Of a stretch of DNA of 64,000 nt, positions 18,976-38,803 are shown one piece after another; the first letter of the stretch is position 1; the number at the start of each line of letters is the position of its first letter. This stretch comes from Blepharisma stoltei ATCC 30299 (lineage: Eukaryota; Protista; Ciliophora): assembly GCA_965603825.1 (NCBI GenBank), contig CBFDEM010000058.1:186001-250000 (forward strand), in the 5' to 3' direction. Both the position numbers and the translations under genes were made by a program. The notes beneath the pieces are model-generated. The model was not told where the DNA came from. It saw only the letters and a program-made list of their open reading frames with translations, and ran no database searches.

Positions 18976-19434
18976 TAATAAAATAGTTATTAAAAATGTT
19001 TTCCTAACTTAGAGATTAAATCTTAAAGTTGTAGATATAATTGAAATATTACTAGTAGAGATTGAGAAAATTTATTTATGATGAGCATGCTGATTGTTTT
19101 AAATAGCCAAAGACGTTCTGTGCTCATACCAATGCAGATATAGATTAATATTTTTTAAGAAATACAAAATTTTTTTAATAGTCTTTTAATTAAAAATACT
19201 GAAATTTATGACCTTGGATTTCTATTCTTATCCTAGACCAATTAAGTGTCTGCATGAATAATGAAGAAGACAGGATAATATTATATATAAATTGATTCTT
19301 CCTTATAGCATTATCTAAGCATTTTTTAGCTTTATCAAAATTAAATAAATAATTCATTTATCTTTCAAAATCTGATGATATAAAACATAAAAGACTAAAC
19401 ATGAACATCTAAAAAAAATAATTTATATATATTA

Positions 19435-22400
19435 ATGGGGGAAGACAAATTATTCAAAACAAGTTCAGCGCCAGGCTCTGATTTCCGACAAATAAGTATA
19501 GATCGAGGGCGTGCGTCTGAATTAATTGTATTTCCAACAAATTACATAACAACCGCAAAATATACAATTCTAACACTTCTACCAAAAAACTTATTTGAGC
19601 AATTTCATAGAATTGCAAATATCTGATTCTTAATTGTTTCGATACTTCAACTTTTGCCGCTTGATCTCTCTCCTACTTCAAATTGAGCTACAATTGCCCC
19701 TTTATCATTAGTCCTTACTGTGACTCTATTCAAAGATGTGTATTTGGACTGATGCCGGCACAAAATGGATCGAAAAATCAACAATAAAATAGTTAACATT
19801 TGAGATGAAAATCAAGGAAAGTTTATTGAAATCAAATGAAAAGACTTAGAAGTAGGGAATGTGGTGCTATTAACTGAAGAAAACTGCCAAGTCCCTGCAG
19901 ATATAATGCTTCTAACTTCAAGTCACCAGGAAAAGCTGGTTTATATCGAAACTAGTAGCTTAGATGGAGAAAGCAATTTAAAAATTAGAAACTGTGTCTA
20001 TGAAATTGCCAGTATATTCGAAAACGAATCCCCAGACTCAGCTATTAAAAAATTATATCATCTAGATGAAGGCGTACTTAGAACTGAGCAGCCTAATAAC
20101 CGACTTCATGCTTTTGACGGCTCATTAAAGCTAAAAGGTCACCCACGAGCAATCCCAATTGACATAAATCAAATGGTTTTACGAGGCAGTAGTATAAGAA
20201 ACACCCGCTGGGTACTTGGACTCGTCGTTTTTTCCGGCTCAGATTCCAAACTGATGCGAAATTCTAAAACTCCTCCTCACAAAAGAAGTAATATGGAACG
20301 AAAAGTCAACAAATACCTTGCAGTGGTGTTTTCTTTATTATTCTTAATGGTATTTATCAGCACTAGCATATCATTATCTTACTATTATTCAAACAAAACA
20401 GCTGTTGAGTATTTTTCAGGCACCACCGTTGACAACCAGCCTTTAATTATTTTCACTTTTTTGATTTTATATAATAGCTTGGTGCCTATTTCTTTATATG
20501 TGACTATGGATTGTGTAAGAATTATCCAAGCTCAGTTTATTAGATGGGACTTAGAGATGTTTAATGAGAAAATGAACCAGCCTACAATTGTGAAAACTAT
20601 AGATTTAAACGAAGACTTAGGACAGATTGAGTATATATTTACAGATAAAACCGGGACTTTGACTGAAAATCAAATGGAGTTTAAAAAATGCTATATTGGA
20701 GAGAAATCATATGGATTTCTTGAGCCTCAGCATAGCACAAGACAAACTCAACTATATCATCATAAAAAATTTAAATTTGATGACCCGCAGCTATGGGAAG
20801 ATTTACAAGGAGAAGGTAAAGCAGAAATTTCAGCCTTTTTTGAAGGTCTTGCACTATGCCATACTGTAATAGTAGACCATAAAGAAGATGAAACTGTATA
20901 TCAAGCTGCTTCTCCAGACGAGGAAGCTCTAGTAATCGCCGCTCATTGCTTCGGATTTTCTTTTATTTCGAGCAAAAACAAAATTTACACCTTAAAGATA
21001 AATAATGAGTGCATGGACTACAAAGTCTTAGGAATAAATGAATTTACATCAGACAGAAAAAGAATGTCAATTGTGGTAGTTCCTTTAAGTGATAGATCTA
21101 GAAAGCCATTTTTAATTTGCAAAGGAGCTGACAACGTTATGCTTGAGCGCTGCTTAGGAACTTCAAATGAAATTGAAAAGCTGACAGTAAACTCTTACGA
21201 ATTTTCTGTGTCTGGGCTTAGAATTATGGTTCTTGCAAAAAAAGAATTGTCAGACGAAGAAACCCAAGCATACGAAAAAGGGTATAATGATGCTATGCAT
21301 GCCTTAAATGACAAAGACAAAAGACTTGCAGATCTCGCTGAAGAGCTTGAGCAAGACATGCAAATTGTAGGGGTCACTGCAATTGAAGATAAAATCCAAG
21401 AAAATGTCCCGTCAACTATAGCAACACTTATTGATGCTGGAATAAAAATATGGGTATTAACAGGTGACAAACAAGAAACTGCTATAAATATTGGCTATTC
21501 ATGCAAATTAATTAAATCAAATATGAATCTTATCAAAGTCAATGCAAAATCATTAGATGAGACGAGAAATATCCTAAGAGGAAACTTAACAAAGCATATA
21601 AGTGGGCACGAGTTTAGGAGACAAACAAGCGTATTAGATCAAATAAGGTACATTGGTAATAACAATACTCCTGGGAATACTGTGATTGGCGACAAAATGA
21701 TGCCTAGATATCAATTTGTGAAGCATGATACTGATCTTCTTGATGGAGATATCAAAGTAAAAAATCCTCATTTATTGAATCAAGCCCTAATAGTTGATGG
21801 GCTAACTTTAAGCTTTATTTTGTCTGATTCGGTATGCCTAAGGCTTTTTGTAATTTTAAGTACTTTGTGCAAGTCAGTTCTGTGCTGCCGTGTATCGCCT
21901 TTGCAAAAATCGGAAATTTTAAAAATTATTAAAAATCACCTAGTGTTCAAGCCTATGACACTAGCAATTGGGGACGGAGCTAATGATGTATCAATGATAC
22001 AAGAAGCTCATGTAGGAATAGGAATCGTAGGCAGAGAAGGTATGCAAGCTGTAAACTCCAGCGATTATGCTATAGCAAGATTTCAATATTTATTACCTTT
22101 ACTATTGAAACATGGTAGAAACAACTATGGAAGACTCGCAAAGGTTATTTTATATTCATTTTATAAAAATTTTATGCTAGTGCTACCTTTATTTTATTTC
22201 AGTTTCCTTAATCAGTATTCCGGAACTACCCTTTATGACTCTTATCTTCAAGTGTTTTTTAACGTGATTTTTACATCACTTCCTATAGTAGTTGTAGGGA
22301 GCATGAACAAAGATATAGAAAGTAGAGTGGTAATGGCAAATCCTTTTGCTTATATTCCTGGGATTTTTAATAAAAAATTCAACCTTGTGATTTTTATTAG

Positions 22401-25400
22401 ATGAAGCTTTTTTGCGATACTTCATACACTTTTGATATTTATTCTTTTGAGAGGGGCTGATTCGTTTACTATGGATTCACATGGAATGATGAGTGGGCTT
22501 GATTTATTTGGGACAGCAGGATTTTTTGCAATTATTATAACAGTGACGTATGTTGTTTTTCTTGAAATGAGAGATTGGACATGAATTTTTGTTTTAATAG
22601 CAAGTCTTAGTTTACTGTTATTTTATCCGTTTGTATTTTTGTATGATGTCTCAGCGTTTCCTACAAACAATCTTGTGGGAGTTCCATCGAGGCTATATAA
22701 AGTTGCTCATTGGTTTTTTTATATAACTTTAGTCCCGCTTGGCTGTTTTATTATAAACCTCTCCTATTTTTTTACACGAGTTTTGTGGTATCCTACTATA
22801 TCAGATCTGCTGATAAAAACTTCACAGATAGCTCCTGAAGAAAGATATGCAGAAAATGAGCCATCACAACAAAAAAATAATTTTCGCTTAGAAGAATACT
22901 GCAATGCCTTAAACAAAGTCTTCATCAACAAAAATTTCAAAAACCTCACCAACCAAGATGAAGACAGTGACTTTTATGCAATGAACTCTATCACTCTTGC
23001 ATTTAAAAACCCCTACGTTGAGAACAGTTATAAACAAAGCATGCTTGACAAACAAGTAAGATTCACTAGATGAATGATCAAAATAATTTTTGTGCTATAC
23101 TCCATATACTGCATCGCTGACTTATCATCAAATTCCTATGGCGATGCTTATATAGCATTTAGATGCATCATGATAGGTGTCGTTTTCAGCTTGTCTTTCT
23201 TTGCATCATCCCAAATCTTTAAAAAACACTACGAATTATTTATGGTAATAATCATCTTCTGTGCCTTGCTTATCAAATTTATTTTTGAAACAATTGCAAT
23301 GAATGACGCATCTATGAGTACTGCAATTGTGCCAATTGCGGTTTTTATTTTGTTTAACGTGAGCAACTATAAAATGTTTATAATTAATCTGCTATTTCTG
23401 GTGATGTATTTGATTAGAATCACGATATGGTATGGTGGTCATTCTTCTCAAGCAGAAGCCACAATTATTATAACAAATTACATTGCATTATTATCTGGAA
23501 TATTTTTAATAAGTGCTTATGTTGGCTATAAAATCGAAAAATTCAATAGAATTTCATTTATTCTTGACAAAAAACTTCAATTTCAATTCCAAAAAGGCCA
23601 AGATATATTAGGCAATCTCTTGCCAGGGTTTGTAAAGGACAGAGTTAAACAAGGAGTAAGATATATAGCTGAAGAGCAAGCTCAAATCACATGCTTATTT
23701 TGTGATATTTATGATTTCGATACAATTTGTGCAATACATACACCAAATGAACTTCTTGAACTATTGGATAAATTTTTCGCTATGCTAGATGCTCTTTGTG
23801 ATAAGCATGGAGTCACTAAAATTGAGACGGTAAATAAAACCTATATGATTTGTGGAGGATTAAAAGATAGTGAAGCTCATCTTCCGAAAAAACAATTAAG
23901 GAGAAACCACGCAGAAAGGTGTCTTGATATTGCTTTACACATAATAAAAAAACTTGAACCAGTTTATATCAAAAATGGGCACAAGCTACAAGTAAAAATT
24001 GGAATCAATTCAGGTCCTGTAATTGCTGGAGTCGTTGGTGAGCATAAGCCACAATTTTCCCTTGTAGGCGACACTATTAATACAGCTGCTAGAATGTGCG
24101 GAACTATAAAAGTCCCTGATAGAATTCAGATATCAGAAGACACTTATAATTTATTGAACAATCACAACGAATACATCTTCTTGCCAAATAAGGTTGAAGC
24201 CAAAGGTAAAGGCATTATGGATACTTTTCTGGTTGAGTCCGCAAAAGGACGAAAGCAGCCAAGGATGCTTGGAGAAGGAGGCATCCGTATCCCAATAAAT
24301 GATTTGTCAGGCGAAGAGTCGTTCTATGGCATTTCTGATAGCGTTTTAGAAAAAAGCTCTGAGCCGCTTATGCAGGATATTATTAGAGGGACAACAATAT
24401 TAAATTTTGAAGAAGAAAGAGTCCAAGAAGGTGAAAAGTTTGATTGGAGTAAGCTAAGAAAAGTGCATGGGGATGAAGATAATGATTTAGAGCTTGCTGG
24501 ACCTATGCATTGACTGATGTGCAGCTTTTTTGAGACGCCTTCTCAACATAAATTTAGGATTCGGCAGTTTAATAATGAAATAAAGAGCGTGAATATTGGA
24601 CTTTATTTAAGCATTGGTACATTTACTGCAATTATTATTGTGTTTATTGCGGCTTATATTGCTGATGAGATAACGGGATCTGTTATACAGGTGATTTTAA
24701 GGCTAAGCTATGTTGTTATTTTGATCTTTTATTTGATTTTGCTACTAAAAATGTACCAAAACCCAATGTTTCCTTGGGGAGTTATGATGGTCTACATATA
24801 CATAACATTTGTCAACCTTTTGAATTTCCACGATATTGATACTGGTTTGATTTATATAAAAGTTATTCAGGTTATGTACACAAATATTGTAGTCAGCCAT
24901 GTCAGCGGACTCCCAATTGGGTATATATTAACTGCTACTGTAGTAAATTTTGTTGATTGATACTGCGTTGCCTTTAGTTCTGAGCATTCATTAGGAAGAA
25001 TGATTGAAGGAACCTTTTTTATTGTTGCATTTTTCTTTTTAAACTGTATAGCAAGTTGTGTAAGAGAATATCAAGCTAGAAAATCTTATGATCTTAATAA
25101 ATTCGCTGAGAGGGAAATTAAAAACACAGAAAAGCTGTTAAATCAAATGATCCCTCCCCAAGTTCTCAGAAATCTCCAGAACGATATTACTACAACGGAT
25201 AGATACACAGATGTAACTATAATTTATGCAGATATCTGCGGATTTACCAGCTGGTCTTCAGATAAAAAGCCAATAGAAGTGGTCGGTATGCTTTCCAAAC
25301 TCTTTACTAATTTTGATCATTTGTGTGTGAGGCATAATGTTTATAAAGTTCATACCATTGGAGATTGCTATGTGATATTAAGTTTTACTGACAGTGAAAA

Positions 25401-25794
25401 AAGGAATTTCAAAGAAGAAGCTGTTAATATGGTCGAAATGGCTTTAGATATGGTTAAAGCTATCAAAAGAGTTAATAAAAGCAAAGGAATCGGCTTGAAC
25501 ATGAGAATTGGGATGCATACAGGAGTGGTGGTTGCTGGAATTACTGGCACAAATATTGTGAGATATGATATTTATGGTCCTGATAATGATATTGCGAATA
25601 AAATGGAAAGCAAAGGATGTCCTGGGAAGATTAACGTTAGTCAAGTTTCTAAAGCAATTTTGCAAGAAATAGTGCCGAACCGATTCGAATATCAGTTTAA
25701 TACTGTTGTAACTCATGATCCTACTCAGAGATCACTAGACTCATTCTTTTTAGTTCCATTGCTTGAAAAAGATATCATAGTTGATGAAGAGTAA
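19435..25794 (+). CDS. P4-ATPase (flippase-like)-guanylyl cyclase fusion, copy 1 (~2119 aa)
   Basis: All ORF fragments share one frame and are joined by TGA. P4 motifs: [37 protein letters not shown]. Two TM blocks and two cyclase domains follow (KIETV/INTAARM; ADICGFT/TIGDCY/RYDIYG). Confidence 0.93.
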
Positions 25795-26155
25795 AATAAT
25801 TTAAAATATGTTGAATAGTTTGGTCTAAGATTCTTTTCAATTTTAACATTTTTTTTTTATTTATTCCTTATACCAATTTTTATTTTGCTAGATTTTAAAG
25901 TTTAAGAGGATATATTTTGATGCAAAGAGACGTTTACATTTATACTCAAAAAATGTTAAATCTCAAATAATATTTATTTAAACTGCAATTTTTTTAAAAT
26001 ATTTTCATCAATTCTTTATTTCAATTTATTACCGGCAAATCGATCAATATTTTATTTAAAAATGCAGCAATTTTTAAAAATTGTAAAAACTGCAGAAGAA
26101 GAAAAATTTATCAGCAATATATATTCAAATTTTTGTGTAAATTTATAGTAATATT

Positions 26156-29100
26156 ATGGGAGATGATAAGCTGTTTGCAGCAAGCACAGCGCCTGGATCA
26201 GATTTTCGTCAAATAAATATCGACAGAGGCCGTGCATCAGAACTGATTGTTTTTCCGACAAATTATATCACAACTGCAAAATATACCTATTGAAATCTAT
26301 TACCTAAAAACCTATTTGAGCAGTTCCATAGAATCGCAAATATCTGATTTCTAATAGTCTCGATTCTTCAACTATTGCCTCTTAATTTATCCCCTACTTC
26401 GAACTGGGCCACAATCGCTCCATTATCCCTCGTCCTCACAGTAACACTCTGCAAGGATATTTATTTAGACTGATGCCGTCACAAAATGGACCGTAGAATT
26501 AATAACAAAAGAATTAACATTTGAGACGAAAATAAAGGAAAATTCATTGAGCTCAAGTGGCAAGATCTTGAGGTTGGAAATATTGTGCTTTTGACTGACG
26601 AAAATTGCCAAGTCCCAGCTGATTTAATGCTGCTTACTTCAAGCCACCCAGAGAAGTTTGTATATATAGAAACAAGCAGTTTGGATGGAGAAAGTAACTT
26701 AAAAATAAGACACTGCGTAAATGAAATTGCCAATATTTTTGAAAATGAGTCGCCTGACATGTCGATTAAACAATTATATCATTTAGATGAAGCGGTATTA
26801 AAAACAGAACAACCGAATAATAAATTGCATGCTCTTGACGCTTCATTGAAACTTAGAGGGCATCCTCGGGCTATACCGATTGATATTAACCAAATCATTT
26901 TGAGAGGAAGCTCAATTAGAAATACTAAGTGGGTGCTTGGTTTAGTTGTCTTTACAGGAATTGATACAAAGCTTATGAAAAATTCAAAGCCACCACCTCA
27001 CAAGAGAAGCAATGTGGAAAGAAAAGTCAATAAGTATTTAGCCTTGGTGTTTTCTATATTATTTATTATTGTGCTAATATCTACTTCGATTTCTTTATCT
27101 TACACTTACAACAATAAAAATGCAGTGAAATTTTTTACAGGTGCAGAGCTTCAAAATTCTCCATTGGTAGTCATAACTTTTCTGATTTTATATAACAGTT
27201 TAGTCCCAATTTCCTTGTATGTGACTATGGATTGCGTGAGAATTATCCAATCGCAATTTATTAAATGAGATTTGACTATGTATAGTGAAAAAATGAACCA
27301 GCCTGCAATTGTAAAGACGACCGATTTAAATGAAGATTTAGGACAGATTGAGTATATTTTTACTGATAAAACAGGGACTCTGACAGAAAACATCATGGAG
27401 TTTAAAAAGTGCTATATAAATGGGAAATCGTATGGATTTATAGAGTCTCAGCAGTCTGATCGACCGACCCAGCTGCTTTATCACCCCAAATTCAAGTTTG
27501 AAGACCCACAGCTTTTAGAAGATTTGCAATGGGATGGAAAAGACGAAATTTCAGCATTTTTTGAGTCACTTGCACTTTGCCACACAGTAATCCCAGACCA
27601 TGTAGATGGTGAACTTGTATATCAAGCTGCATCTCCTGATGAAGAAGCACTTGTAATTGCAGCCCATTGTTTTGGATTTTCTTATATTTCTAGCAAAAAT
27701 GGGATTTACACACTCCAAATCAATTTAGACGTGACTGAGTACAAAATTTTAGGGATTAACGAATTTTCATCAGACAGAAAGAGAATGTCGATTGTGGTGT
27801 TCCCTATAAATGACAGGACAAGAAAGCCTTTTTTAGTATGCAAAGGAGCGGACAATGTTATGCTGGAAAGATGCCTAGGGACGACTACTCAAATCGAAAA
27901 GCTGACTGCTAATTTATACGAATTCTCTGTAGAAGGGTTAAGAATTATGATTATTGCAAGAAAAGAACTGACTGAAGAAGAAGCTTTGGCGTATGAAAAA
28001 AAATATAGTGATGCAAAAAATGCGTTAAATGATAAACAAAAAAGACTTGCAGAGTTAGCTGAAGAACTAGAACAAAACATGACGATTGTAGGAGCTACTG
28101 CGATTGAAGATAAGATTCAAGAAAATGTCCCTGAAGCAATATCTACCTTAATAAATGCAGGCATAAAGATATGGGTATTAACAGGTGATAAACAAGAAAC
28201 AGCCATCAATATCGGCTTTTCTTGCCATCTGCTAAAGCCAGAGCTACAATTAATGAAGCTTAATGGCAGAAGTGTCGATGAAACTAGAAATATTTTGCGT
28301 TACAACCTAGCCCGACATGTAAAATGTGACGAAGATGATGAAAGAAAGCACAGTGTCCTCAGCCAAATTCGATATGTCGGAAATACTCCATCAAGCAGCA
28401 TCATAGGTTCCAAAATTTCTGGCCCAAGATACCAATTCATAAAAAATGACGTCGATATATTTGATGGAGACTTAGAAGTAAAAAATATGAATACCCTTAA
28501 ACTTGCCCTTATAGTTGATGGAGTCACTTTAGGGTTCATTTTGTCAGATCCAGTATGCTTAAGACTATTTGTCATTTTAAGCACCCTCTGCAAGTCAGTT
28601 ATTTGCTGCAGGGTTTCTCCGCTTCAAAAAGCTGAGGTCGTGAAGACGCTTAAAAACCACTTGGCTTTTAAGCCTATGACTTTAGCTATTGGGGATGGGG
28701 CAAATGATGTCTCAATGATACAAGAAGCACATGTAGGTATCGGAATTGTGGGTAAAGAAGGTATGCAAGCTGTAAATTCCAGTGATTATGCTATTGCAAG
28801 GTTCTATTTCTTGCTGCCACTGCTGCTAAAGCACGGTAGAAATAACTACGCAAGAGTGTCAAAAGTGATTTTATATTCTTTTTATAAAAACTTCATGCTG
28901 GTTTTACCCTTATTTTATTTCAGCTTTTTTAATGCTTATTCTGGCACTGCACTTTATGACTCTTGGCTAATGGTTTCTTATAACATCATTTTTACATCTC
29001 TGCCTATCGCTGTTGTTGGCAGTATGAATAAGGACCTGGAAGGAGAAATCGCAATAGCAAACCCTATAGTTTATTTACCTGGGATTTTTGGTTTAAAATT

Positions 29101-32100
29101 TAACTTCAAAATATTTTTAAGATGATGCACTTTTGCAATCGTCCATACCATTTGGATTTTTTTTCTTTTAAGGGCTGTTGACTATTTTACAATAGACTCA
29201 CAAGGATCTTCTTCGAGCTTAGACTTGACTGGGACTGCAGGATTTTTTGCGATCATTATTACAGTTACTTATGTAATTGCACTGGAAATGAAAGATTGGA
29301 CACTTTTATTTGTCCTGGTAACGACGATCAGCTTACTTCTATTTTATCCAATTATTTTTATATACGATTATGGAGGATTTCCTACTCCAAGTATGGTCGG
29401 AATTTCAACAAGGCTTTATTCAGTTCTCCATGTGTTTTTATACATCACATTTGTACCTTTAACCTCTTTTATCCTGAATATAACAGTTTATCTAATCCGT
29501 ACTCTTTGGAGCCCTACTGCTTCTGATAAAATCATCCAAGACTCAGTTTTAGCTTCAAAAAAATATTCAAATGACCCTCAGAACGATTCCTTTGCGAAGG
29601 ACAATTTCAGACTTGAAGAGTATTCATCGAAACTTAATAAGGTGTATATTAATAAAGGTATTAAAAATGACATGAATGAAGACGAAGACAGTGATTTCTA
29701 TGCGGTATCAAACATTACTTTACAGTTTAAAAGGGCTTATAATGAAAAAGTGTATAAGTTGAGCTATATCGACAAGAGAATTAAGTATACAAGAGCAATG
29801 CTTATTGTAATCACTTTTATTTATACGGTATACATTATCCCAGATATGGTTGTAAATACATATTCTGATACTATAATTGTATCAAGATGCATTATTTTTG
29901 TAGTTTTAATTGGTATTTGTATTTTCACTAAGACTCAGACATTTAGAAAACATTGTGAATTTTATATTTTGACTATTACATTTTTAGGATTATTAGCGAA
30001 ATTTATTAATGAGTCAATGCTAATGAATGATGGCTCAATGAGCACAGCAATAGTGCCGATAGCCTTATTTATTTTATTCAATGTCAGCACTTATAAAATG
30101 TTTATCCTTAATTTATTGTTTTTGATCATGTATTTTATAAGAATCACCATTTATATTGTAACTTCTGTTGACCCTGGTACTGGTTGGATGGTTATAATCA
30201 ATTATCTAGTCCTTTTGTCTGGGATTTTTATAATAAGTGCTTATGTTGGCTACAAAATTGAAAAATTCCACAGATTAGAATTTATCCTCGATAAAAAGCT
30301 TCAGCTGCAATTCCAAAAAGGCCAAGATATCTTAGGCAACTTATTGCCTGGTTTTGTTAAAGAAAGAGTAAAGCAAGGAGTCAGATATATAGCTGAAGAG
30401 CAAGGACAAGTCACATGCTTATTCTGTGACATTTACGATTTTGATACCATTTGTGCTATCCATACCCCTAATGAGCTACTAGAGCTCCTGGATAAATTTT
30501 TTGCTATTATAGATGCTCTATGTGATAAGCATGGGGTGACTAAAATCGAAACAGTAAATAAAACCTATATGATTTGTGGAGGACTAAAAGACAGTGAAGA
30601 AAGACTGCCAAAAAGTCAGCTCAAGCGAAACCACGCTGAAAGATGCCTTGACATAGCACTTCATATTATTAAAAAAATAGAGCCAGTCGTTTTGAAAAAC
30701 GGGCATAAACTTCAAGTAAAAATTGGAATAAATACAGGTCCTGTGATTGCTGGAGTCGTTGGAGAGCACAAACCTCAATTTTCTTTAGTTGGGGACACTA
30801 TAAATACAGCTGCTAGAATGTGTGGGACTATTACAATTCCTGACCGAATTCAAATATCAATGGACACTTACAATCTTTTAACAGAGAAAAACCGCTATCT
30901 TTTTTCTCCTAATGAAGTTGAGCCTAAAGGGAAGCCTAAAATGCATACTTTTTTTGTAGAAAGCGTTAAAAACCGGAGAGGGTCAGAATTGGTAACAGCT
31001 TTATTAGACGCTACCTCTATTTCTCCTGATCATTCATTTTATGCTATTGCTGACGAAGGTTTAGAAAAAAGCCAAGAGCCTTTAATACAAGATTTGATAC
31101 GAGGAAGCACTGTAAAAGATTTTGAAGATGACAGAGTGGAACAAGAAGAAAAATTTGACTGGAGCAAGCTAAGGGAAACTGCATCTGCTGAAGACGAGTT
31201 TGAGTTAGAGCTTGCAGGACCAATGCATTGGCTAATGTGCAGCTTTTATGAGACCCCTGCAGAGCACAAATTCAGGATACACCAATTCACGAATGAGCTT
31301 CAAAGCGTGAAATTTGGGCTTTGGCTAAACATTTCTGTGTATACTGTCATGATTACTCTTTTTACAGTGCTGTATACCTTTGATGATGTGAGCGGCTCAA
31401 TTTTCCAGATAGTTGCAAGAGCCTGCTATATAGCTGGCCTGATGATATACTTGATCTATATAAAGCAACTAAATGAAAGCTCTCTTTTCCCATGGGGAGT
31501 GATGATGCTTTATATCGTGATTTCATTCATAAATAACCTGAACTTTGAAGAAGCCGGCAGGACCCTCGCATATGCAAAAGTGCTACAAGCAATGTTCACG
31601 AATATCACAGTAAACCATATAAGCGCTCTCCCAATTGGATTTATTCTTACAGCAACGGTAGTGAACTATATAGCCTGGATATGTATGGCTTTTAGCTCAG
31701 ATTACTCAGCAAACCTAAAAATAGAAACCACCTTTTTTGTCACCATTTTCTTCCTATTAAACTATGTAGCTAGTTTTGTCAGGGAATTTCAAGCAAGAAG
31801 GTCATATGATCTTAATAAATGCGCAGAGAGAGAAATAAAAAACACAGATAAGCTGCTCAGCCAGATGATGCCTCCACAAGTGCTCAGAAATCTTCTAAAC
31901 GATGTAGCTACAACTGATAAATACACAGACGCGACGATTATTTATGCTGATATCTGTGGATTTACCAGCTGGTCTTCTAATAGGAAACCTATAGAAGTAG
32001 TAGGGATGCTATCAAAGCTTTTCACTAATTTCGACCATCTCTGTGTGATGCATAATGTGTATAAAGTCCATACCATCGGAGACTGTTATGTTGTTTTAAG

Positions 32101-32512
32101 TTTCACTGACAATGAAAAAAGAGACTATAAAGAAGAAGCTGTGAAGATGGTAGAAATGGCTTTAGATATGGTAAAAACTATTAAAAGAATAAGCAAAAGC
32201 AAAGGAATTAGCTTGAATATGAGGATTGGAATGCACACTGGAGAAGTTGTAGCTGGAATCACAGGGACAAATATAGTAAGATATGATATATATGGCCCTG
32301 ATAATGATATCGCTAATAAAATGGAAAGCAAAGGGTTCCCTGGCAGAATTAATGTAAGTGAAGTAACAAAAGCAATTTTGCAAGAAATGCTTCCTAGTCG
32401 CTTTGACTATGTTTTTAATACAGAAGTTACTCATGACCCAACCCACAGGACGTTGAATTCGTATTTTATAATCCCTTTGCTTGAAAAAGATATCATTGTT
32501 GATGAAGAATAA
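26156..32512 (+). CDS. P4-ATPase-guanylyl cyclase fusion, copy 2 (~2118 aa)
   Basis: Tandem paralogue with the same start (MG.DKLF), the same end ([12 protein letters not shown]) and the same motifs; one frame via TGA. Confidence 0.93.
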
Positions 32513-32987: not shown

Positions 32988-35798
32988 ATGGTAAGCGACA
33001 CTTAGTGGATGATCAAGTTCTTAAATAAAGAAACCAGATATCAGGTTCCTCGCTGATGAACCCACATGAGCTCAAACCACGACATAGTGTGACTCTTCCA
33101 AGATGACATTCAAGTGCCACCAGATGAGCGGTTTCCTTTTTACTTGAAATTGGTAAGGGTTGCAGTGCTCCAGCTTATCTTACTGTGCGCAGTCGCTTTT
33201 TTGTTTGGCAATGGCGAGTATTTTTATAACGAATGTCAAAGGAGGAAGAAATGTATGACATATTGCCAAGAAGCCTATTTTCCTTTATTAACATGTGCAG
33301 ATTCTGGCTATATGCTGAATTACAAAGGAAATGAGTACAGAAAGCTGTGGAGTTACCCTTATTATGATAACTCAGAATATAGGACTTGCTATGGCTATAT
33401 GAGTGACAACCCTGACTACTCCACATCAGAATGGGACTCAGATAGGCAAGAGAGGCTTCATACTTGTTTTCCAGCCTGCAAAACCGGAAATGATTCAGAT
33501 TATACTGATGACACAAGACCTGAATGCACAGATAGCTCAACTGACCCTGGAATGGTATGTGTTAGAGAAAGTGATTCGTGTGAACAAGTGTATTTGCCTT
33601 CAAGGGTTGGGGATGTGGATGGGGTTTCCTTCGATATTGGCTATGCTTGAATTGCCATTGCCATTGCAAATTGTTTTCAGTATATTTACTTGTATATACT
33701 TATATTTACACTTGGGCTTAAGTCTCTGAGCATAAACAACATTAAAATCGGCTTTATGAAGTGTGGTGTAGAAACTGTAATACTGGTTATTTCTGGACTT
33801 TGCTCGCTGCTAATTGTATATCAAGCTACACTTATTGATGCTTATGGACCTTCTAAAGAGTTTTGGTTTACATTTTTTGTAGCTTTTATGATAGACCAGT
33901 CCAAGAGTTTTGTGTTTCATACAGGTGTATGATATTTTTTATTCCGTAGATGTGGTTACTTAAGAACTAATGAAGAAGATTTTATTGATCCAGCATGGAA
34001 ACATAAAGATGAACAAGCCCAATTGTCAATTCGTGGCCAAATCGCTAAAATAATGGAGACGAATCAATACAAATTTTGTTCGATGGGCTTTCTAGGCATT
34101 TATGCTGTCTATGTTTTAGCAATTTTAAGTATTGGCTCAAATAGTATCCTTGATATTATCGATGTGTCATTTATAGGAGTGTTTTTATTTGAAATTTGTG
34201 TAGCCACATGAGTCAACTGCATGAAAAATTTTATGGACCTTTTTAATATTTTTGATGCTGTTATTGTGTCTGTATCATTTATTCTGTATTTTGTAGGGGT
34301 TGGAGCTAAAGGATTAGCAGTACTTAGATTGCTGAGACTTGTAAGGCTTATCATTGTGCTGAGAAAGGTTACTGCGAACACTCAAAGAAAAAGCAGTGGG
34401 TATTCGACTGTTTATGAAGAGTCTTTAGCTATACTCAGACAGCTGAAAAACCAGAAGAAATTGAGTTTTAAACAGAAAAAAGAACTGAATTGGGTAATCG
34501 GGATTATAGAAAGCGGAAAACTTTATGACGTGGTGGTAGCTCAACAGAGCGATAAAGGGAATGGGCAGGTTTCTCAAGACAATGAAGGCAGAAAATGGAT
34601 TAATATGGCTACAATAATTGCAAATGATCCTTTGTTATGGTTTGATAGAGACCTAGACGATTATTTATACGAAAGGCAAAGAGATGATGAGCCTGAAGAC
34701 AATAAAGACGAATTTGAAGAAGAAATCCGCCAAATAATCGGAATTTCTGAAAAAACCCATTTTCAGCTTGAAAAGATTTTCGATGACATCGGCAAGTGGA
34801 GATTCAACGCTTTTCAATACTTTGACCTATGCGGGCCTCAAGTAATTTCTCATTTTATTATCAGACTCTTCAAGCTTTACGACATTTCAAGAAAATTCGA
34901 AATCCCAATGATGTCTCTCAAAACCTTTTCTACAGCAATATATGAAGGATATTCCAGCACAAATCCCTACCACAACGCAATCCATGCTATTGATGTAGCG
35001 CACAAGCTTAATTATTTTATCCTGACTGGAGACTTAATGAAATATATTTCAGATCTTGACATTATGGCAGCGCTTATAGCAGCAATTATTCATGATTTCC
35101 AACATCCAGGAGTCACTAATGAATTTTTAATTAAGCGGTCTCATTCAAAAGCAATCAGGTATAATGATTTTTCAGTCCTAGAAAGGCATCATTTAGCTAG
35201 TGCATTTGCTGCCTTGCTAGACCAAAGCTGTGATATCACGATTAATCTTACAGAAGACCAATACTGGCTGGTGAGGACTACCATTGTAAAAATGGTTTTA
35301 TCGACTGATTTAAAGCTTCATGACAAGACTTTAGGGTCTTTCAAAAATTCCAGAAATATCCCGAATTTTCCTAATAATGATAAAGAAAGACAAATTTTGA
35401 TGAATATAGCCTTAAGGATTGCTGATAATGGAAACCCTCTGCAGCCTCAAGATTTGTACTTTAAATGGATGGCTTTAATGATGGAGGAATTTTATCAGCA
35501 GGGAGATATAGAAGAGCATTTAAATATGGAGCTTACTGCACCTTTTATGGATAGAAAAAGCACAAATCCTTATACAAGCCAGCTTGCTTATATTGAAGTA
35601 GTGGTAGAGCCGATGGTAGAGATATGGATTGATTTTATACCAGAAGTGAAGGAAGATATATTTACTAGAGGGCTTCTTGAAAATAAAGAAGCCTTAAGAC
35701 AAAAGTCAGATACAGTGCCAAAAATGAATAACGAAGAAGATACAAATGAAATTGATATGAAAAGAAAACGAAAAGAAGGAATGCTGATGGAGAAATAA
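32988..35798 (+). CDS. membrane class I cyclic-nucleotide phosphodiesterase with an N-terminal 4-TM/Cys-rich module and an S1-S4 voltage-sensor domain (~931 aa)
   Basis: ATG 32988, intron 32991-33005, then one frame through TGA codons. VSD: FLFE (S2), NIFD (S3), LRLLRLVRLIIVLRK (S4). PDE: PYHNAIHAIDV, HDFQHPG.TN, SVLERHH, TDL, ADNGNP, EEFYQQGD, SQ. Confidence 0.88.
32991..33005 (+). other. 15-nt intron immediately after the start codon
   Basis: GTAAGCGACACTTAG; an alternative start is ATG 33009. Confidence 0.65.
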
Positions 35799-36187
35799 TC
35801 GATTATCTTTAATTTATTGAATTCAATTAATTTATGACTATAAATTAATAATATTTTAAAAATTAAATTTTCATCTACGTTTGAATAATAATGATATAAA
35901 TTTTGGAATTTAATCCAGATAAGAAAATAAATAAAAATTTTTTTTATTATAAAATACCTTAAAATATATATGCATAAGAATATCTAAAGTTCTTTGGGTT
36001 TATACATATTTTTATTAGAGCAGTTTCTATTATAAATTAACAATATTAGATATCATTATTATCCAAAATAAATAATTGCGAATAATTAATGCATATAATT
36101 TATATATGAAAAGTCTGCTTTGAAGAGATTTTCAAATAAAGCTTAAATCATACTATAGAAAATAATTGGTGATAAAATAAAACAAAG

Positions 36188-37897: not shown

Positions 37898-38803
37898 ATG
37901 AAAATTTTATTACTTTCAGCCCTAGTTGTCCTTGCCTTATCAGGACCAGCTATTGTCCGTGACCCGTCTGCTCCTCTTTTTACTCAAGAAGACATCGATT
38001 TAATTAACCAAAGTCAAGATTCATGGACAGCCTCACTCGATTGGGTTGGCTCAATGACCGCTGAAGACGTCAAAAAATATGCTACCACCCAAATCAGACC
38101 AAGAGAGTTCCCAGAATTCCACTGGGGAGCAGTGCTCGAAAATCTCCAAGTTCCAGCCAGTTTCGACTCAAGGAATCAATGGCCAAGCTGCGTTCACCCA
38201 ATTCTTAACCAAGGAGATTGTGGATCATGCTGGGCTTTTGGAGCAACTGAAGCTCTGTCAGACAGACTTTGCATTGGTTCAAAAGGATCAATCAACGTTG
38301 TCCTTTCCCCTCAATATTTAGTTGATTGTGACCACACTAGCCAAGGATGCAGTGGAGGATACCCAGATCTTGCCTGGAGCTTCATGAAGACTAACGGAGT
38401 TCCTACATATTCTTGCGTTGGATACACTGCTGCTAATGGAAATTGTCCAAAAACTTGCGACAATGGATCTTCATTACAATTCTACAAGGCTGCAAGCGTA
38501 AGCACTTACAGCGGACCATCTTCAATTCAAGCTGCTATTCTTGCTGGAGGTCCAGTAGAAACTGCTTTTTCTGTTTATGAAGACTTTATGACTTACAGCG
38601 GTGGAGTCTATAAGCATACCAGCGGTGGATATGTTGGAGGACATGCAGTAAAAATTATTGGATGGGGTAACCAAAGCGGAACCAATTACTGGATATGCGC
38701 AAACTCTTGGGGAACTAGCTGGGGTATTCAAGGATTTTTCTGGATTGCTTTTGGACAATGTGGAATTGATAGTCAAGCAGTTGCTGGAAGCCCATTAGTT
38801 TAA
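37898..38803 (+). CDS. cathepsin B-like cysteine protease (papain C1A), intact
   Basis: Signal peptide, FDSRNQWP, QGDCGSCWAF, GGHAVKIIGWG, YWICANSWG; no occluding loop. Confidence 0.95.
   Translation: MKILLLSALVVLALSGPAIVRDPSAPLFTQEDIDLINQSQDSWTASLDWVGSMTAEDVKKYATTQIRPREFPEFHWGAVLENLQVPASFDSRNQWPSCVHPILNQGDCGSCWAFGATEALSDRLCIGSKGSINVVLSPQYLVDCDHTSQGCSGGYPDLAWSFMKTNGVPTYSCVGYTAANGNCPKTCDNGSSLQFYKAASVSTYSGPSSIQAAILAGGPVETAFSVYEDFMTYSGGVYKHTSGGYVGGHAVKIIGWGNQSGTNYWICANSWGTSWGIQGFFWIAFGQCGIDSQAVAGSPLV

What the first reader, a model, noticed from the sequence alone, without database searches (positions are those of the whole stretch)
32988..35798. Candidate voltage-sensing phosphodiesterase: pore-less S1-S4 sensor fused directly to a class I PDE
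Seen: reading TGA as Trp joins four ORF fragments into one ~931-aa protein. Bases ~34068-34370 encode four helices with voltage-sensor hallmarks: S2 FIGVFLFE (charge-transfer Phe plus Glu), S3 NIFD, and S4 LRLLRLVRLIIVLRK (Arg at 34326, 34335, 34344, then R/K). No S5-pore-S6 follows. Instead a ~200-aa linker leads to a PDE domain with intact metal and substrate residues (YHN..H, HD, D, invariant Q in SQLAYI). Established: VSD-enzyme fusions include the voltage-sensing phosphatases and alveolate channel-like adenylyl cyclases, while characterised membrane PDE sensors include rhodopsin-PDEs. I know of no characterised VSD-PDE. S1 has no Hv1-type Asp. Inference: membrane potential could directly control cNMP hydrolysis, linking ciliary electrical excitability to cGMP/cAMP.
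Basis: partly seen in the sequence, partly recalled or inferred. Interest (0 to 1): 0.92.

Follow-up and report, generated by a model that had tools for sequence, protein, structure and literature searches.

The report
Pore-less voltage sensor fused to phosphodiesterase
This ciliate gene really encodes one membrane protein in which a channel-type voltage sensor without a pore is joined to a cyclic-nucleotide-degrading enzyme. It belongs to an untested protein family found across ciliates, dinoflagellates and chromerids, and it could turn membrane voltage directly into a cAMP/cGMP signal.

Summary
Window 32988-35798 (+) is one gene: an ATG, an annotated 15-nt intron, and one exon with six in-frame TGA codons read as Trp. 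The public record for it (P0092) is exactly 931 aa.

- **Voltage sensor.** Residues 354-463 form an S1-S4 domain (Pfam Ion_trans 42.9 bits, S1-S4 part of the profile only). The predicted fold matches CatSper, Cav2.2 and Ci-VSP sensors at Z 12.8-14.1. No pore follows.
- **PDE.** The class I PDE (232 bits; TM 0.93 to PDE4D) keeps its metal ligands and the invariant Gln.
- **One transcript.** A 2851-nt mRNA from a close relative is collinear with the whole gene. It swaps TGA and TGG at two Trp codons.
- **Family.** The sensor-linker-PDE core recurs in about 50 protein clusters, including Climacostomum, Chromera, Oxyrrhis and Amoebophrya. Gating residues are almost invariant (D418 55/55, R445 54/55, R448 53/55, E397 53/55, F394 51/55).
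[quoted passage not shown] Neither read it as a voltage sensor, and nobody has tested it.

Voltage control of catalysis is inferred, not shown. The scan also holds first-reader notes on this same stretch (the N-terminal module and the upstream cyclase cluster).

The parts
32988..32990 (+). Start codon (exon 1 of the annotated model)
   Evidence: P0092 begins M-W. An 'MW' start is shared by long-form homologues from Chromera, Amoebophrya and others.
32991..33005 (+). Annotated 15-nt GT..AG intron that holds the only in-frame TAG
   Evidence: Unresolved: the relative's mRNA L005 begins inside it and carries its last 11 nt.
33006..35798 (+). Main exon, with six in-frame TGA = Trp (33054, 33057, 33090, 33648, 33930, 34209) and stop TAA at 35796-35798
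   Evidence: In the relative's mRNA, TGA 34209 is TGG and TGG 34596 is TGA.
33138..33206 (+). TM0 (residues 46-68)
   Evidence: Hydropathy and model helix 46-68.
33207..33635 (+). Cys-rich ectodomain (residues 69-211). Six of its Cys are nearly invariant (C84, C88, C98, C129, C155, C186).
   Evidence: Alignment A4. Model pLDDT is mostly 85-95, falling to 65-75 at residues 131-150. No known fold or family was found.
33636..33953 (+). Three long membrane helices (residues 212-317) carrying the DQxKS and W..RRCG motifs
   Evidence: D298, W310, R315 and G318 conserved.
34062..34391 (+). Voltage-sensor domain: S1 354-377, S2 381-405, S3 413-431, S4 435-463. Key residues are D387, F394, E397, N415, D418, R442, R445, R448, R454 and K455.
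   Evidence: Pfam Ion_trans 42.9 bits. PDB sequence hit to Nav1.7-VSD2/NavAb, E 1.4e-6. VIA Z 14.1 CatSper, 13.9 Cav2.2, 12.8 Ci-VSP. Conservation counts.
34392..34742 (+). Linker (residues 464-580). It has a basic juxtamembrane stretch, a conserved helical hairpin at residues 470-503 (bases 34410-34511), then an acidic segment of low model confidence.
   Evidence: E472 and Y508 are invariant, and L478, L487, Q491, W497, I499, I502 and L507 nearly invariant, among 16 full-length members. pLDDT values. Against the relative's mRNA: 27 synonymous and 2 non-synonymous differences.
34743..35717 (+). Class I PDE catalytic fold (residues 581-905; the Pfam domain is residues 656-884, bases 34968-35654)
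   Evidence: PDEase_I 232 bits. Foldseek PDE4D TM 0.93, rmsd 1.8 A. Catalytic residues aligned to PDE4D2.
35718..35795 (+). C-terminal tail with a basic cluster (residues 906-931)

Best explanation
The gene encodes an eight-helix membrane protein. It consists of a conserved four-helix N-terminal module with a Cys-rich ectodomain, a pore-less S1-S4 voltage-sensor domain, a conserved cytoplasmic linker, and an active-looking class I cyclic-nucleotide phosphodiesterase.

**Most likely mechanism**
1. A change in membrane potential moves the S4 arginines (R442, R445, R448) past the Phe394 / Glu397 / Asp418 charge-transfer centre.
2. The movement passes along the cytoplasmic extension of S4 into the conserved helical hairpin (residues 470-503).
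3. The hairpin changes access to, or the conformation of, the PDE catalytic site.
4. Local cAMP/cGMP breakdown under the membrane therefore follows voltage.

**Shown here**
- One gene and one transcript.
- A voltage-sensor fold with its hallmark residues.
- No pore domain.
- Intact catalytic residues.
- Family-wide conservation and purifying selection on sensor, linker and enzyme.

**Inferred**
- That the sensor moves with voltage.
- That it controls catalysis.

**Unknown**
- The polarity of the response.
- The substrate.
For: - **Gene model.** It equals the public record P0092, 931 aa.
- **One transcript.** The relative's mRNA L005 is collinear with window 32995-35827. The stretch carrying sensor, linker and PDE is contiguous.
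- **Genetic code.** TGA and TGG swap between the two species at two Trp codons.
- **Independent ORF.** Homologue P0097 is one uninterrupted 928-codon ORF in the standard code.
- **Sensor.** Pfam Ion_trans 42.9 bits, S1-S4 part only. The fold matches solved voltage sensors at Z 12.8-14.1, rmsd 2.2-2.5 A, over 117-119 residues.
- **Gating residues in 55 family members.** D418 55/55, R445 54/55, R448 53/55, E397 53/55, F394 51/55, D387 47/55, R442 40/55.
- **Family architecture.** 50 of 55 members have Ion_trans and 51 of 55 have PDEase_I.
- **Linker.** Its residues are conserved from ciliates to Oxyrrhis at 26-30% overall identity.
- **Selection.** Synonymous / non-synonymous differences against the relative's mRNA are 31/1 in the sensor, 27/2 in the linker and 58/3 in the PDE.
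- **PDE.** Fold and catalytic residues are intact.
Against: - There are no functional data for any member.
- About 60 residues of the linker (504-567) are predicted with pLDDT 41-60. Rigid mechanical coupling like that of the short VSP linker is therefore not evident.
- The fourth S4 position (451) is hydrophobic, so there are only three stacked gating arginines.
- Full-length P0092 missed Ion_trans in hmmscan. The hit appears only on the excised domain or in homologues.
- I had no model coordinates, so contacts between the linker and the catalytic site were not examined.
Confidence: 0.6

Rival explanations
1. The S1-S4 domain is only a membrane anchor, targeting or oligomerisation module. PDE activity is constitutive or regulated by other means such as phosphorylation or Ca2+, and voltage does not control it.
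For: The linker is long and partly low-confidence. Many alveolate PDEs carry N-terminal transmembrane regions with no known sensing role (PMC10865986). TMEM266 shows that an S1-S4 domain can exist without a known effector (PMC6392501, listed).
Against: An anchor would not need R445, R448, D418, E397 and F394 kept in 51-55 of 55 clusters down to about 25% identity. It also would not explain 31 synonymous against 1 non-synonymous change in the sensor. TRP-type S1-S4 domains that do not sense voltage have lost these charges (established knowledge).
Confidence: 0.15
2. The primary input is extracellular. The conserved Cys-rich ectodomain and its four-helix module bind a ligand or sense a mechanical or chemical cue. 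The S1-S4 domain acts as a transmission element, or as a second, integrating input to the PDE.
For: The N-terminal module is conserved from ciliates to Chromera and Amoebophrya, with six nearly invariant Cys and the DQxKS / RRCG motifs. It is confidently modelled.
Against: Short forms such as Oxyrrhis P0095 (600-780 aa) lack the module yet keep sensor, linker and PDE, so the module is not needed for the core design. It has no known fold or family. It is less constrained than the rest, with 60 synonymous against 19 non-synonymous changes.
Confidence: 0.15
3. The pore-less sensor itself conducts ions or protons, as in Hv1 or an omega current, and the PDE is a tethered regulator or is regulated by that flux.
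For: There are three S4 arginines followed by a non-basic residue, as in Hv1 (sequence; the Hv1 pattern is from established knowledge). CatSper sensor domains, the best structural match, have been reported to pass Ca2+ (PMC7560727, listed).
Against: No acidic residue lies in S1. The nearest candidate column is Tyr in 44 of 55 members and Asp in only 2. The Phe394 hydrophobic plug is conserved.
Confidence: 0.06
4. The fusion is an annotation artefact: two adjacent genes, a sensor-only protein and a PDE, joined by reading through TGA.
For: Under the standard code the frame is broken at 34209, between S2 and S3. A Euplotes study reported PDEase_I and Ion_trans genes as always adjacent (PMC8670190).
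Against: The break lies inside the sensor, not between domains. S3, S4, linker and PDE form one standard-code ORF, 34221-35798. TGA 34209 is TGG in the relative's mRNA. P0097 and about 50 other clusters carry both domains in one ORF.
Confidence: 0.02

Closest known systems
Voltage-sensing phosphatases (Ci-VSP, Dr-VSP, TPTE family)
   Same: A pore-less S1-S4 voltage sensor sits N-terminal to a cytoplasmic enzyme. S4 continues as a helix into a basic juxtamembrane linker. The predicted sensor superposes on the Ci-VSP sensor 4g7v at Z 12.8, 2.3 A, over 117 of 136 residues.
   Different: The enzyme is an HD-type class I PDE acting on a soluble second messenger, not a PTEN-like lipid phosphatase. 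The linker is about 115 aa rather than about 16-20 aa. There is an extra four-helix N-terminal module with an ectodomain. S4 has three stacked Arg.
Toxoplasma gondii TgPDE4 and TgPDE16 (clade B PDEs)
   Same: [quoted passage not shown] Their clade also holds human PDE1 and PDEs of free-living alveolates (PMC10865986). That fits this PDE's similarity to PDE1 and PDE4.
   Different: Those papers did not interpret the domain as a voltage sensor and did not test it. TgPDE4 is reported to have many substitutions among its catalytic residues and to be expressed only in cat stages. Here the catalytic residues are intact. Orthology was not tested, because the Toxoplasma sequences were not retrieved.
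Alveolate ion-channel adenylyl cyclases (Paramecium, Plasmodium ACalpha)
   Same: An alveolate protein that joins a voltage-gated-channel-derived membrane domain to a cyclic-nucleotide enzyme (established knowledge).
   Different: Those proteins keep S5-pore-S6 and make cAMP. This one has no pore and degrades cNMP.
Rhodopsin-phosphodiesterase (Salpingoeca rosetta Rh-PDE)
   Same: A membrane sensor domain joined by a helical linker to a C-terminal class I PDE, making a direct stimulus-to-cNMP-hydrolysis enzyme (established knowledge).
   Different: The sensor there is a retinal-binding rhodopsin. Here no rhodopsin family is detected and the sensor is an S1-S4 domain.
SLC9C1 (sperm Na+/H+ exchanger with a voltage sensor)
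   Same: A voltage sensor controls a non-channel effector. The sensor matches structurally at Z 11.5 (8pcz).
   Different: The effector there is a transporter with a cyclic-nucleotide-binding domain, not an enzyme.

Membership tests
Voltage-sensor domain (S1-S4 of Pfam PF00520 Ion_trans) | Significant match restricted to the S1-S4 part of the profile | tested here: met
   42.9 bits, E 4.4e-11, profile positions 13-111 of 241. Homologues score 36-52 bits.
Voltage-sensor domain (S1-S4 of Pfam PF00520 Ion_trans) | S4 with basic residues at every third position | tested here: met
   R442, R445 and R448, then hydrophobic 451, then R454 and K455. R445 is kept in 54/55 members and R448 in 53/55.
Voltage-sensor domain (S1-S4 of Pfam PF00520 Ion_trans) | Charge-transfer centre: S2 aromatic plus acidic residue, and S3 Asp | tested here: met
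   F394 51/55, E397 53/55 (the other 2 are Asp), D418 55/55. They align to the same positions in the Nav1.7-VSD2/NavAb chimera.
Voltage-sensor domain (S1-S4 of Pfam PF00520 Ion_trans) | Four-helix voltage-sensor fold | tested here: met
   In the predicted model, the top ~40 VIA matches are nearly all S1-S4 domains of voltage-gated or TRP channels, Z 9-14. This rests on a predicted structure, not a solved one.
Voltage-sensor domain (S1-S4 of Pfam PF00520 Ion_trans) | Charge movement in response to voltage | not testable with these tools
   Requires gating-current or voltage-clamp fluorometry recordings.
Voltage-gated cation channel (full Ion_trans) | S5-pore loop-S6 after S4 | tested here: not met
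   There is no hydrophobic segment after residue 470 except a PDE core helix. The Pfam match stops at profile position 111.
Class I cyclic-nucleotide PDE (PF00233) | Domain match above the curated cutoff, and the PDE fold | tested here: met
   232 bits against a cutoff of 24.8. TM 0.93 and rmsd 1.8 A to PDE4D.
Class I cyclic-nucleotide PDE (PF00233) | Metal-binding His/Asp residues and the invariant substrate-clamp Gln | tested here: met
   H657, H661, H697-D698, D808 and Q860 align with the corresponding PDE4D2 residues. They are invariant among 16 full-length relatives.
Class I cyclic-nucleotide PDE (PF00233) | cAMP/cGMP hydrolysis and substrate preference | not testable with these tools
   Needs an enzyme assay. 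Sequence similarity is highest to PDE4 (199 bits), then PDE1B (176 bits).
Voltage-sensing phosphatase (VSP) | PTEN-like phosphatase and C2 domains after the sensor | tested here: not met
   Only PDEase_I is found C-terminal to the sensor.
Hv1 voltage-gated proton channel | Selectivity-filter Asp in S1 | tested here: not met
   S1 (residues 354-377) has no acidic residue. The nearest candidate column is Tyr in 44 of 55 members.
Rhodopsin-PDE | Microbial rhodopsin membrane domain | tested here: not met
   No rhodopsin family is hit in residues 1-345 or 340-480.
Ion_trans-PDE proteins noted in Toxoplasma (TgPDE4, TgPDE16) | PF00520 fragment N-terminal to PF00233 in one protein | tested here: met
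   The architecture matches the published description. It is present in 50 of 55 family members.
Ion_trans-PDE proteins noted in Toxoplasma (TgPDE4, TgPDE16) | Orthology with TgPDE4 or TgPDE16 | not tested
   The Toxoplasma sequences were not among the hits. The Eimeria PDE that was retrieved (P0258) has no sensor.

The most novel reading that the evidence does not exclude
This family is a second, independent class of voltage-regulated enzyme after the voltage-sensing phosphatases. It would be a voltage-gated cyclic-nucleotide phosphodiesterase, ancient in alveolates, that converts membrane potential directly into a cAMP/cGMP signal and so links electrical excitability to ciliary or flagellar and sensory behaviour.
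Probability: 0.5. Interest if true: 0.88.

Novelty: new variant of a known kind. Interest (0 to 1): 0.78.

Why it matters
**For the voltage-sensor field**
- To my knowledge, the voltage-sensing phosphatases are the only enzymes shown to be driven by a voltage-sensor domain.
- A 2024 review of voltage sensors that I searched mentions neither phosphodiesterases nor cyclases.
- A sensor-PDE would show that the module has been wired to a second-messenger enzyme.
- It would also offer a naturally evolved tool for lowering cNMP by voltage.

**For protist biology**
- In ciliates, cAMP and cGMP levels track hyperpolarisation and depolarisation and set ciliary beat (established knowledge from Paramecium).
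- A voltage-gated PDE is a concrete, testable molecular link between the two.

**For reach and testability**
- The family spans ciliates, dinoflagellates and chromerids, and probably coccidia.
- It is clonable, so the question can be tested directly.

Tried and rejected
**Calls that failed or found nothing**
No reads from this organism were laid and read laying was not used.
- One six-term paper search timed out. Searches for 'voltage-sensing / -gated / -dependent / -sensitive phosphodiesterase' found no paper.
- No tRNA gene lies in the window, so a UCA-anticodon tRNA-Trp could not be used as evidence for the code.

**The N-terminal module**
- It has no Pfam hit.
- It has no convincing look-alike in the ESM Atlas. 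The best lead is a 344-aa diatom cluster, with feature score 0.80 and TM 0.42.
- In the VIA search the sensor filled the list, so the module's fold remains untested.

**Other negative results**
- Full-length P0092 misses Ion_trans in hmmscan. Scanning the excised domain recovers the hit.
- Foldseek on the 475-residue model gave only E of 0.2 or worse, though its top rows were voltage sensors. VIA gave clear Z scores.
- Looking for the Toxoplasma orthologue through an Eimeria PDE failed. Those proteins have no sensor.
- The cyclase-PDE gene adjacency is not conserved in the genome that carries P0097.

- No complex prediction was run, because I make no binding claim.
- I did not type or build the joined, read-through protein. 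The pieces were searched apart. After that I used the database's own record P0092.
Full report
**1. The gene**

The frame opening at 32988 runs to a TAA at 35796-35798. It is interrupted by one TAG and six TGA codons (33054, 33057, 33090, 33648, 33930, 34209). The TAG lies inside a 15-nt GT..AG stretch (32991-33005) directly after the ATG.

With that stretch removed and TGA read as Trp, the product is 931 aa. A protein of exactly this sequence, P0092, is already on record in NCBI/UniRef for a 1.14-Mb contig. Its name is withheld, as the tools do for the window's own products. I did not build the joined sequence myself. The stop-separated pieces were searched apart, and after that the database record was used.

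The genome (G000) has 41.5 Mb in 64 contigs. Together with UGA = Trp, 15-nt introns and a 92%-identical MMETSP transcript, this points to a Blepharisma species. That identification is my inference from general knowledge; no tool named the organism.

**2. TGA is Trp, and the gene is one transcript**

L005 is a 2851-nt assembled mRNA, held both as JGI 3300016922 and as MMETSP Transcript_3958. It comes from a close relative and is collinear with window 32995-35827 at 92% nucleotide identity.

- It runs from the first codons to 29 nt past the stop.
- It has no in-frame TAA or TAG.
- Five of the window's TGA codons are TGA in the mRNA too.
- TGA 34209 is TGG in the relative, and TGG 34596 is TGA. 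These are synonymous swaps in both directions, as expected if TGA encodes Trp.
- Two TGA positions, W30 and W321, align with Trp in all homologues that cover those columns.

The transcript has a run of N near 33336. Only the part from about 33337 onward is contiguous assembly, and that part holds the sensor, the linker and the PDE.

One loose end remains. The mRNA begins inside the annotated intron and carries its last 11 nt. Either that molecule is unspliced, or translation starts at the ATG at 33009. The 'MW' start shared by distant long-form homologues favours the spliced model. Neither outcome affects the sensor-PDE reading.

RNA reads from the organism itself could not be obtained.

**3. 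Domain anatomy**

Coordinates are residues of P0092. The full-length AlphaFold2 model was built on 55 sequences and has mean pLDDT 85.

| Residues | Element |
|---|---|
| 1-45 | Cytoplasmic N-terminus |
| 46-68 | TM0 |
| 69-211 | Cys-rich ectodomain |
| 212-238, 247-281, 284-317 | Three long helices |
| 330-352 | Pre-S1 helix |
| 354-377 | S1 |
| 381-405 | S2 |
| 413-431 | S3 |
| 435-463 | S4 |
| 464-580 | Linker |
| 581-905 | PDE catalytic fold |
| 906-931 | Basic tail |

With a cytoplasmic N-terminus, the eight helices place the ectodomain outside and the PDE inside. After S4 the only hydrophobic stretch is a PDE core helix, so there is no S5-pore-S6.

**4. The voltage sensor**

- *Sequence.* The excised domain matches Pfam Ion_trans at 42.9 bits (cutoff 25), over profile positions 13-111 of 241. 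Against solved structures, the best sequence matches are the Nav1.7-VSD2/NavAb chimera (E 1.4e-6), NavAb and Cav channels. Phe394, Glu397, Asp418 and the S4 arginines fall in register.
- *Fold.* A separate model of residues 1-475 has pLDDT 80. Searched against 48,161 PDB representatives, its top ~40 matches were almost all S1-S4 domains of voltage-gated or TRP channels:

| Match | Z | rmsd (A) | Residues aligned |
|---|---|---|---|
| CatSper | 14.1 | 2.5 | 119 |
| Cav2.2 | 13.9 | 2.2 | 117 |
| Ci-VSP sensor (4g7v) | 12.8 | 2.3 | 117 of 136 |
| SLC9C1 sensor | 11.5 | 3.1 | 118 |

- *S4 pattern.* S4 carries R442, R445 and R448, a hydrophobic fourth position, then R454 and K455.
- *S1.* It has no acidic residue, so the Hv1 selectivity-filter Asp is absent.

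**5. The PDE**

PDEase_I scores 232 bits. The model superposes on PDE4D catalytic domains at TM 0.93 and rmsd 1.8 A. H657, H661, H697-D698, D808 and Q860 align with the general-acid, metal-binding and substrate-clamp residues of PDE4D2. The closest solved relatives by sequence are PDE4 (199 bits) and PDE1B (176 bits). Substrate preference cannot be read from this.

**6. A family, not a one-off**

- *Search.* A profile of sensor plus linker was run against 1.84 billion representatives. It found 158 proteins below 1e-30.
- *What the hits are.* About 50 are covered in one stretch from S1 to the start of the PDE. The rest of the top list are four-domain Cav/Nav-type channels that match the sensor only.
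- *Architecture.* Of 55 collected members, 51 carry PDEase_I and 50 carry Ion_trans.
- *Named sources.* These are Climacostomum virens, Chromera velia (A0A0G4HX23 and a second protein), Oxyrrhis marina (A0A7S4GPV4), Amoebophrya sp. A25 and an unnamed dinoflagellate.
- *An independent ORF.* Homologue P0097 (57% identity) is an uninterrupted 928-codon ORF in the standard code on a 313-kb contig.
- *A second copy here.* The window's genome holds a second, 27%-identical long-form copy, L002.
- *Two forms.* Long forms (about 900-1100 aa) share the N-terminal module, with six nearly invariant Cys and the DQxKS and RRCG motifs. Short forms (about 600-780 aa) begin just before S1.

**7. Constraint on the sensor**

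Across the 55 members, at 17-30% identity to the query outside its close heterotrich homologues:

| Residue | Conserved in |
|---|---|
| D418 | 55/55 |
| R445 | 54/55 |
| R448 | 53/55 |
| E397 | 53/55 (other 2 are Asp) |
| F394 | 51/55 |
| D387 | 47/55 |
| N415 | 43/55 |
| R442 | 40/55 |

Codon differences between the window and the relative's mRNA show strong purifying selection:

| Region | Synonymous | Non-synonymous |
|---|---|---|
| Sensor | 31 | 1 |
| Linker | 27 | 2 |
| PDE | 58 | 3 |
| N-terminal module | 60 | 19 |

A mere anchor would not be expected to keep the gating charges and the charge-transfer centre this strictly. This is the main argument that the domain still senses voltage. 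It is an argument from conservation, not a measurement.

**8. Coupling**

S4 continues as a helix into the cytoplasm, to about residue 463. A basic stretch follows, then a helical hairpin at 470-503. Its residues E472 and Y508 are invariant, and L478, L487, Q491, W497, I499, I502 and L507 nearly invariant, among the 16 full-length members from ciliates to Oxyrrhis. L507 and Y508 stay at 90% or more in the 55-member set. The hairpin is modelled at pLDDT 78-88.

Residues 504-567 are acidic and poorly modelled, at pLDDT 41-60. I infer that the hairpin is the coupling or autoinhibitory element. This is by analogy with the S4-linker-enzyme contacts of VSP (PMC9245683, listed) and with the regulatory helices of long-form PDE4 (my own knowledge). 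I could not inspect model contacts, and the flexible segment weakens any claim of rigid coupling.

**9. What is already known**

Phrase searches for a voltage-sensing, -gated, -dependent or -sensitive phosphodiesterase returned nothing. A 2024 review of voltage sensors contains neither 'phosphodiesterase' nor 'cyclase'.

The domain combination itself has been noted in print:
- Vo et al. [quoted passage not shown]
- Moss et al. [quoted passage not shown]
- A 2023 review places these two in a clade with human PDE1 and PDEs of free-living alveolates (PMC10865986).

None of these papers reads the domain as a pore-less voltage sensor or tests it. A Euplotes genome paper reports PDEase_I and Ion_trans genes as always adjacent (PMC8670190). 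Those could be split models of the same fusion, which I did not check.

**10. Context**

Two tandem genes lie directly upstream on the same strand (about 19.4-25.8 kb and 26.5-32.5 kb). Each has P4-ATPase domains followed by two guanylate-cyclase domains. This agrees with the scan's note s1-657768. The adjacency is not found around P0097 in its genome, so it gives at most a weak hint that cGMP is the substrate.

**11. Verdict**

The architecture is real, expressed in a relative, ancient and under constraint. The reading 'voltage-sensing PDE' is the best-supported mechanism, at about 0.6, but it rests wholly on inference.

This is not the first sighting of the domain pair. I rate it a new variant of a known kind (sensor-coupled enzymes), with high interest.

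Noticed in passing
window 19400-32512 (+): There are two tandem genes, each with P4-ATPase (flippase) domains followed by two guanylate-cyclase catalytic domains (Pfam). A 2026 paper states that Blepharisma stoltei has only one such gene (PMC13466520). If this genome is that species, the count needs rechecking.
   Followed up: partly
window 32988-33953 (P0092 residues 1-317): The N-terminal module consists of TM0, a Cys-rich ectodomain and three long helices with DQxKS and RRCG motifs. It is conserved between ciliate, Chromera and Amoebophrya long forms and has no known family or fold. The only lead is a 344-aa diatom protein cluster in the ESM Atlas (feature score 0.80, TM 0.42). That cluster might be a stand-alone version of the module.
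   Followed up: partly
L002:1000-3400 (G000:C21:727310-729710): A second long-form sensor-PDE gene lies in the same genome. It is 27% identical over sensor and linker. It has intact S4 arginines, an S3 Asp, PDE motifs and at least one in-frame TGA.
   Followed up: partly
window 32991-33005: The relative's mRNA L005 starts inside the annotated 15-nt intron and carries its last 11 nt. This means intron retention, an unspliced molecule, or a start codon at 33009 instead of 32988.
   Followed up: partly
P0129 (Chromera velia A0A0G4IBZ8, 785 aa): This family member matches the sensor-linker profile (positions 17-333) but is named a RING-type domain-containing protein. RING families were hit by one member of the 55-protein set. 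It may be a variant with a different or additional effector domain.
   Followed up: no
literature: PMC8670190 (Euplotes genomes): The paper reports PDEase_I and Ion_trans genes as always adjacent across Euplotes subgroups. These could be split gene models of the same sensor-PDE fusion.
   Followed up: no
window 37898-38803 (+): A papain-family cysteine protease ORF (Peptidase_C1, 209 bits). Nothing unusual about it.
   Followed up: no
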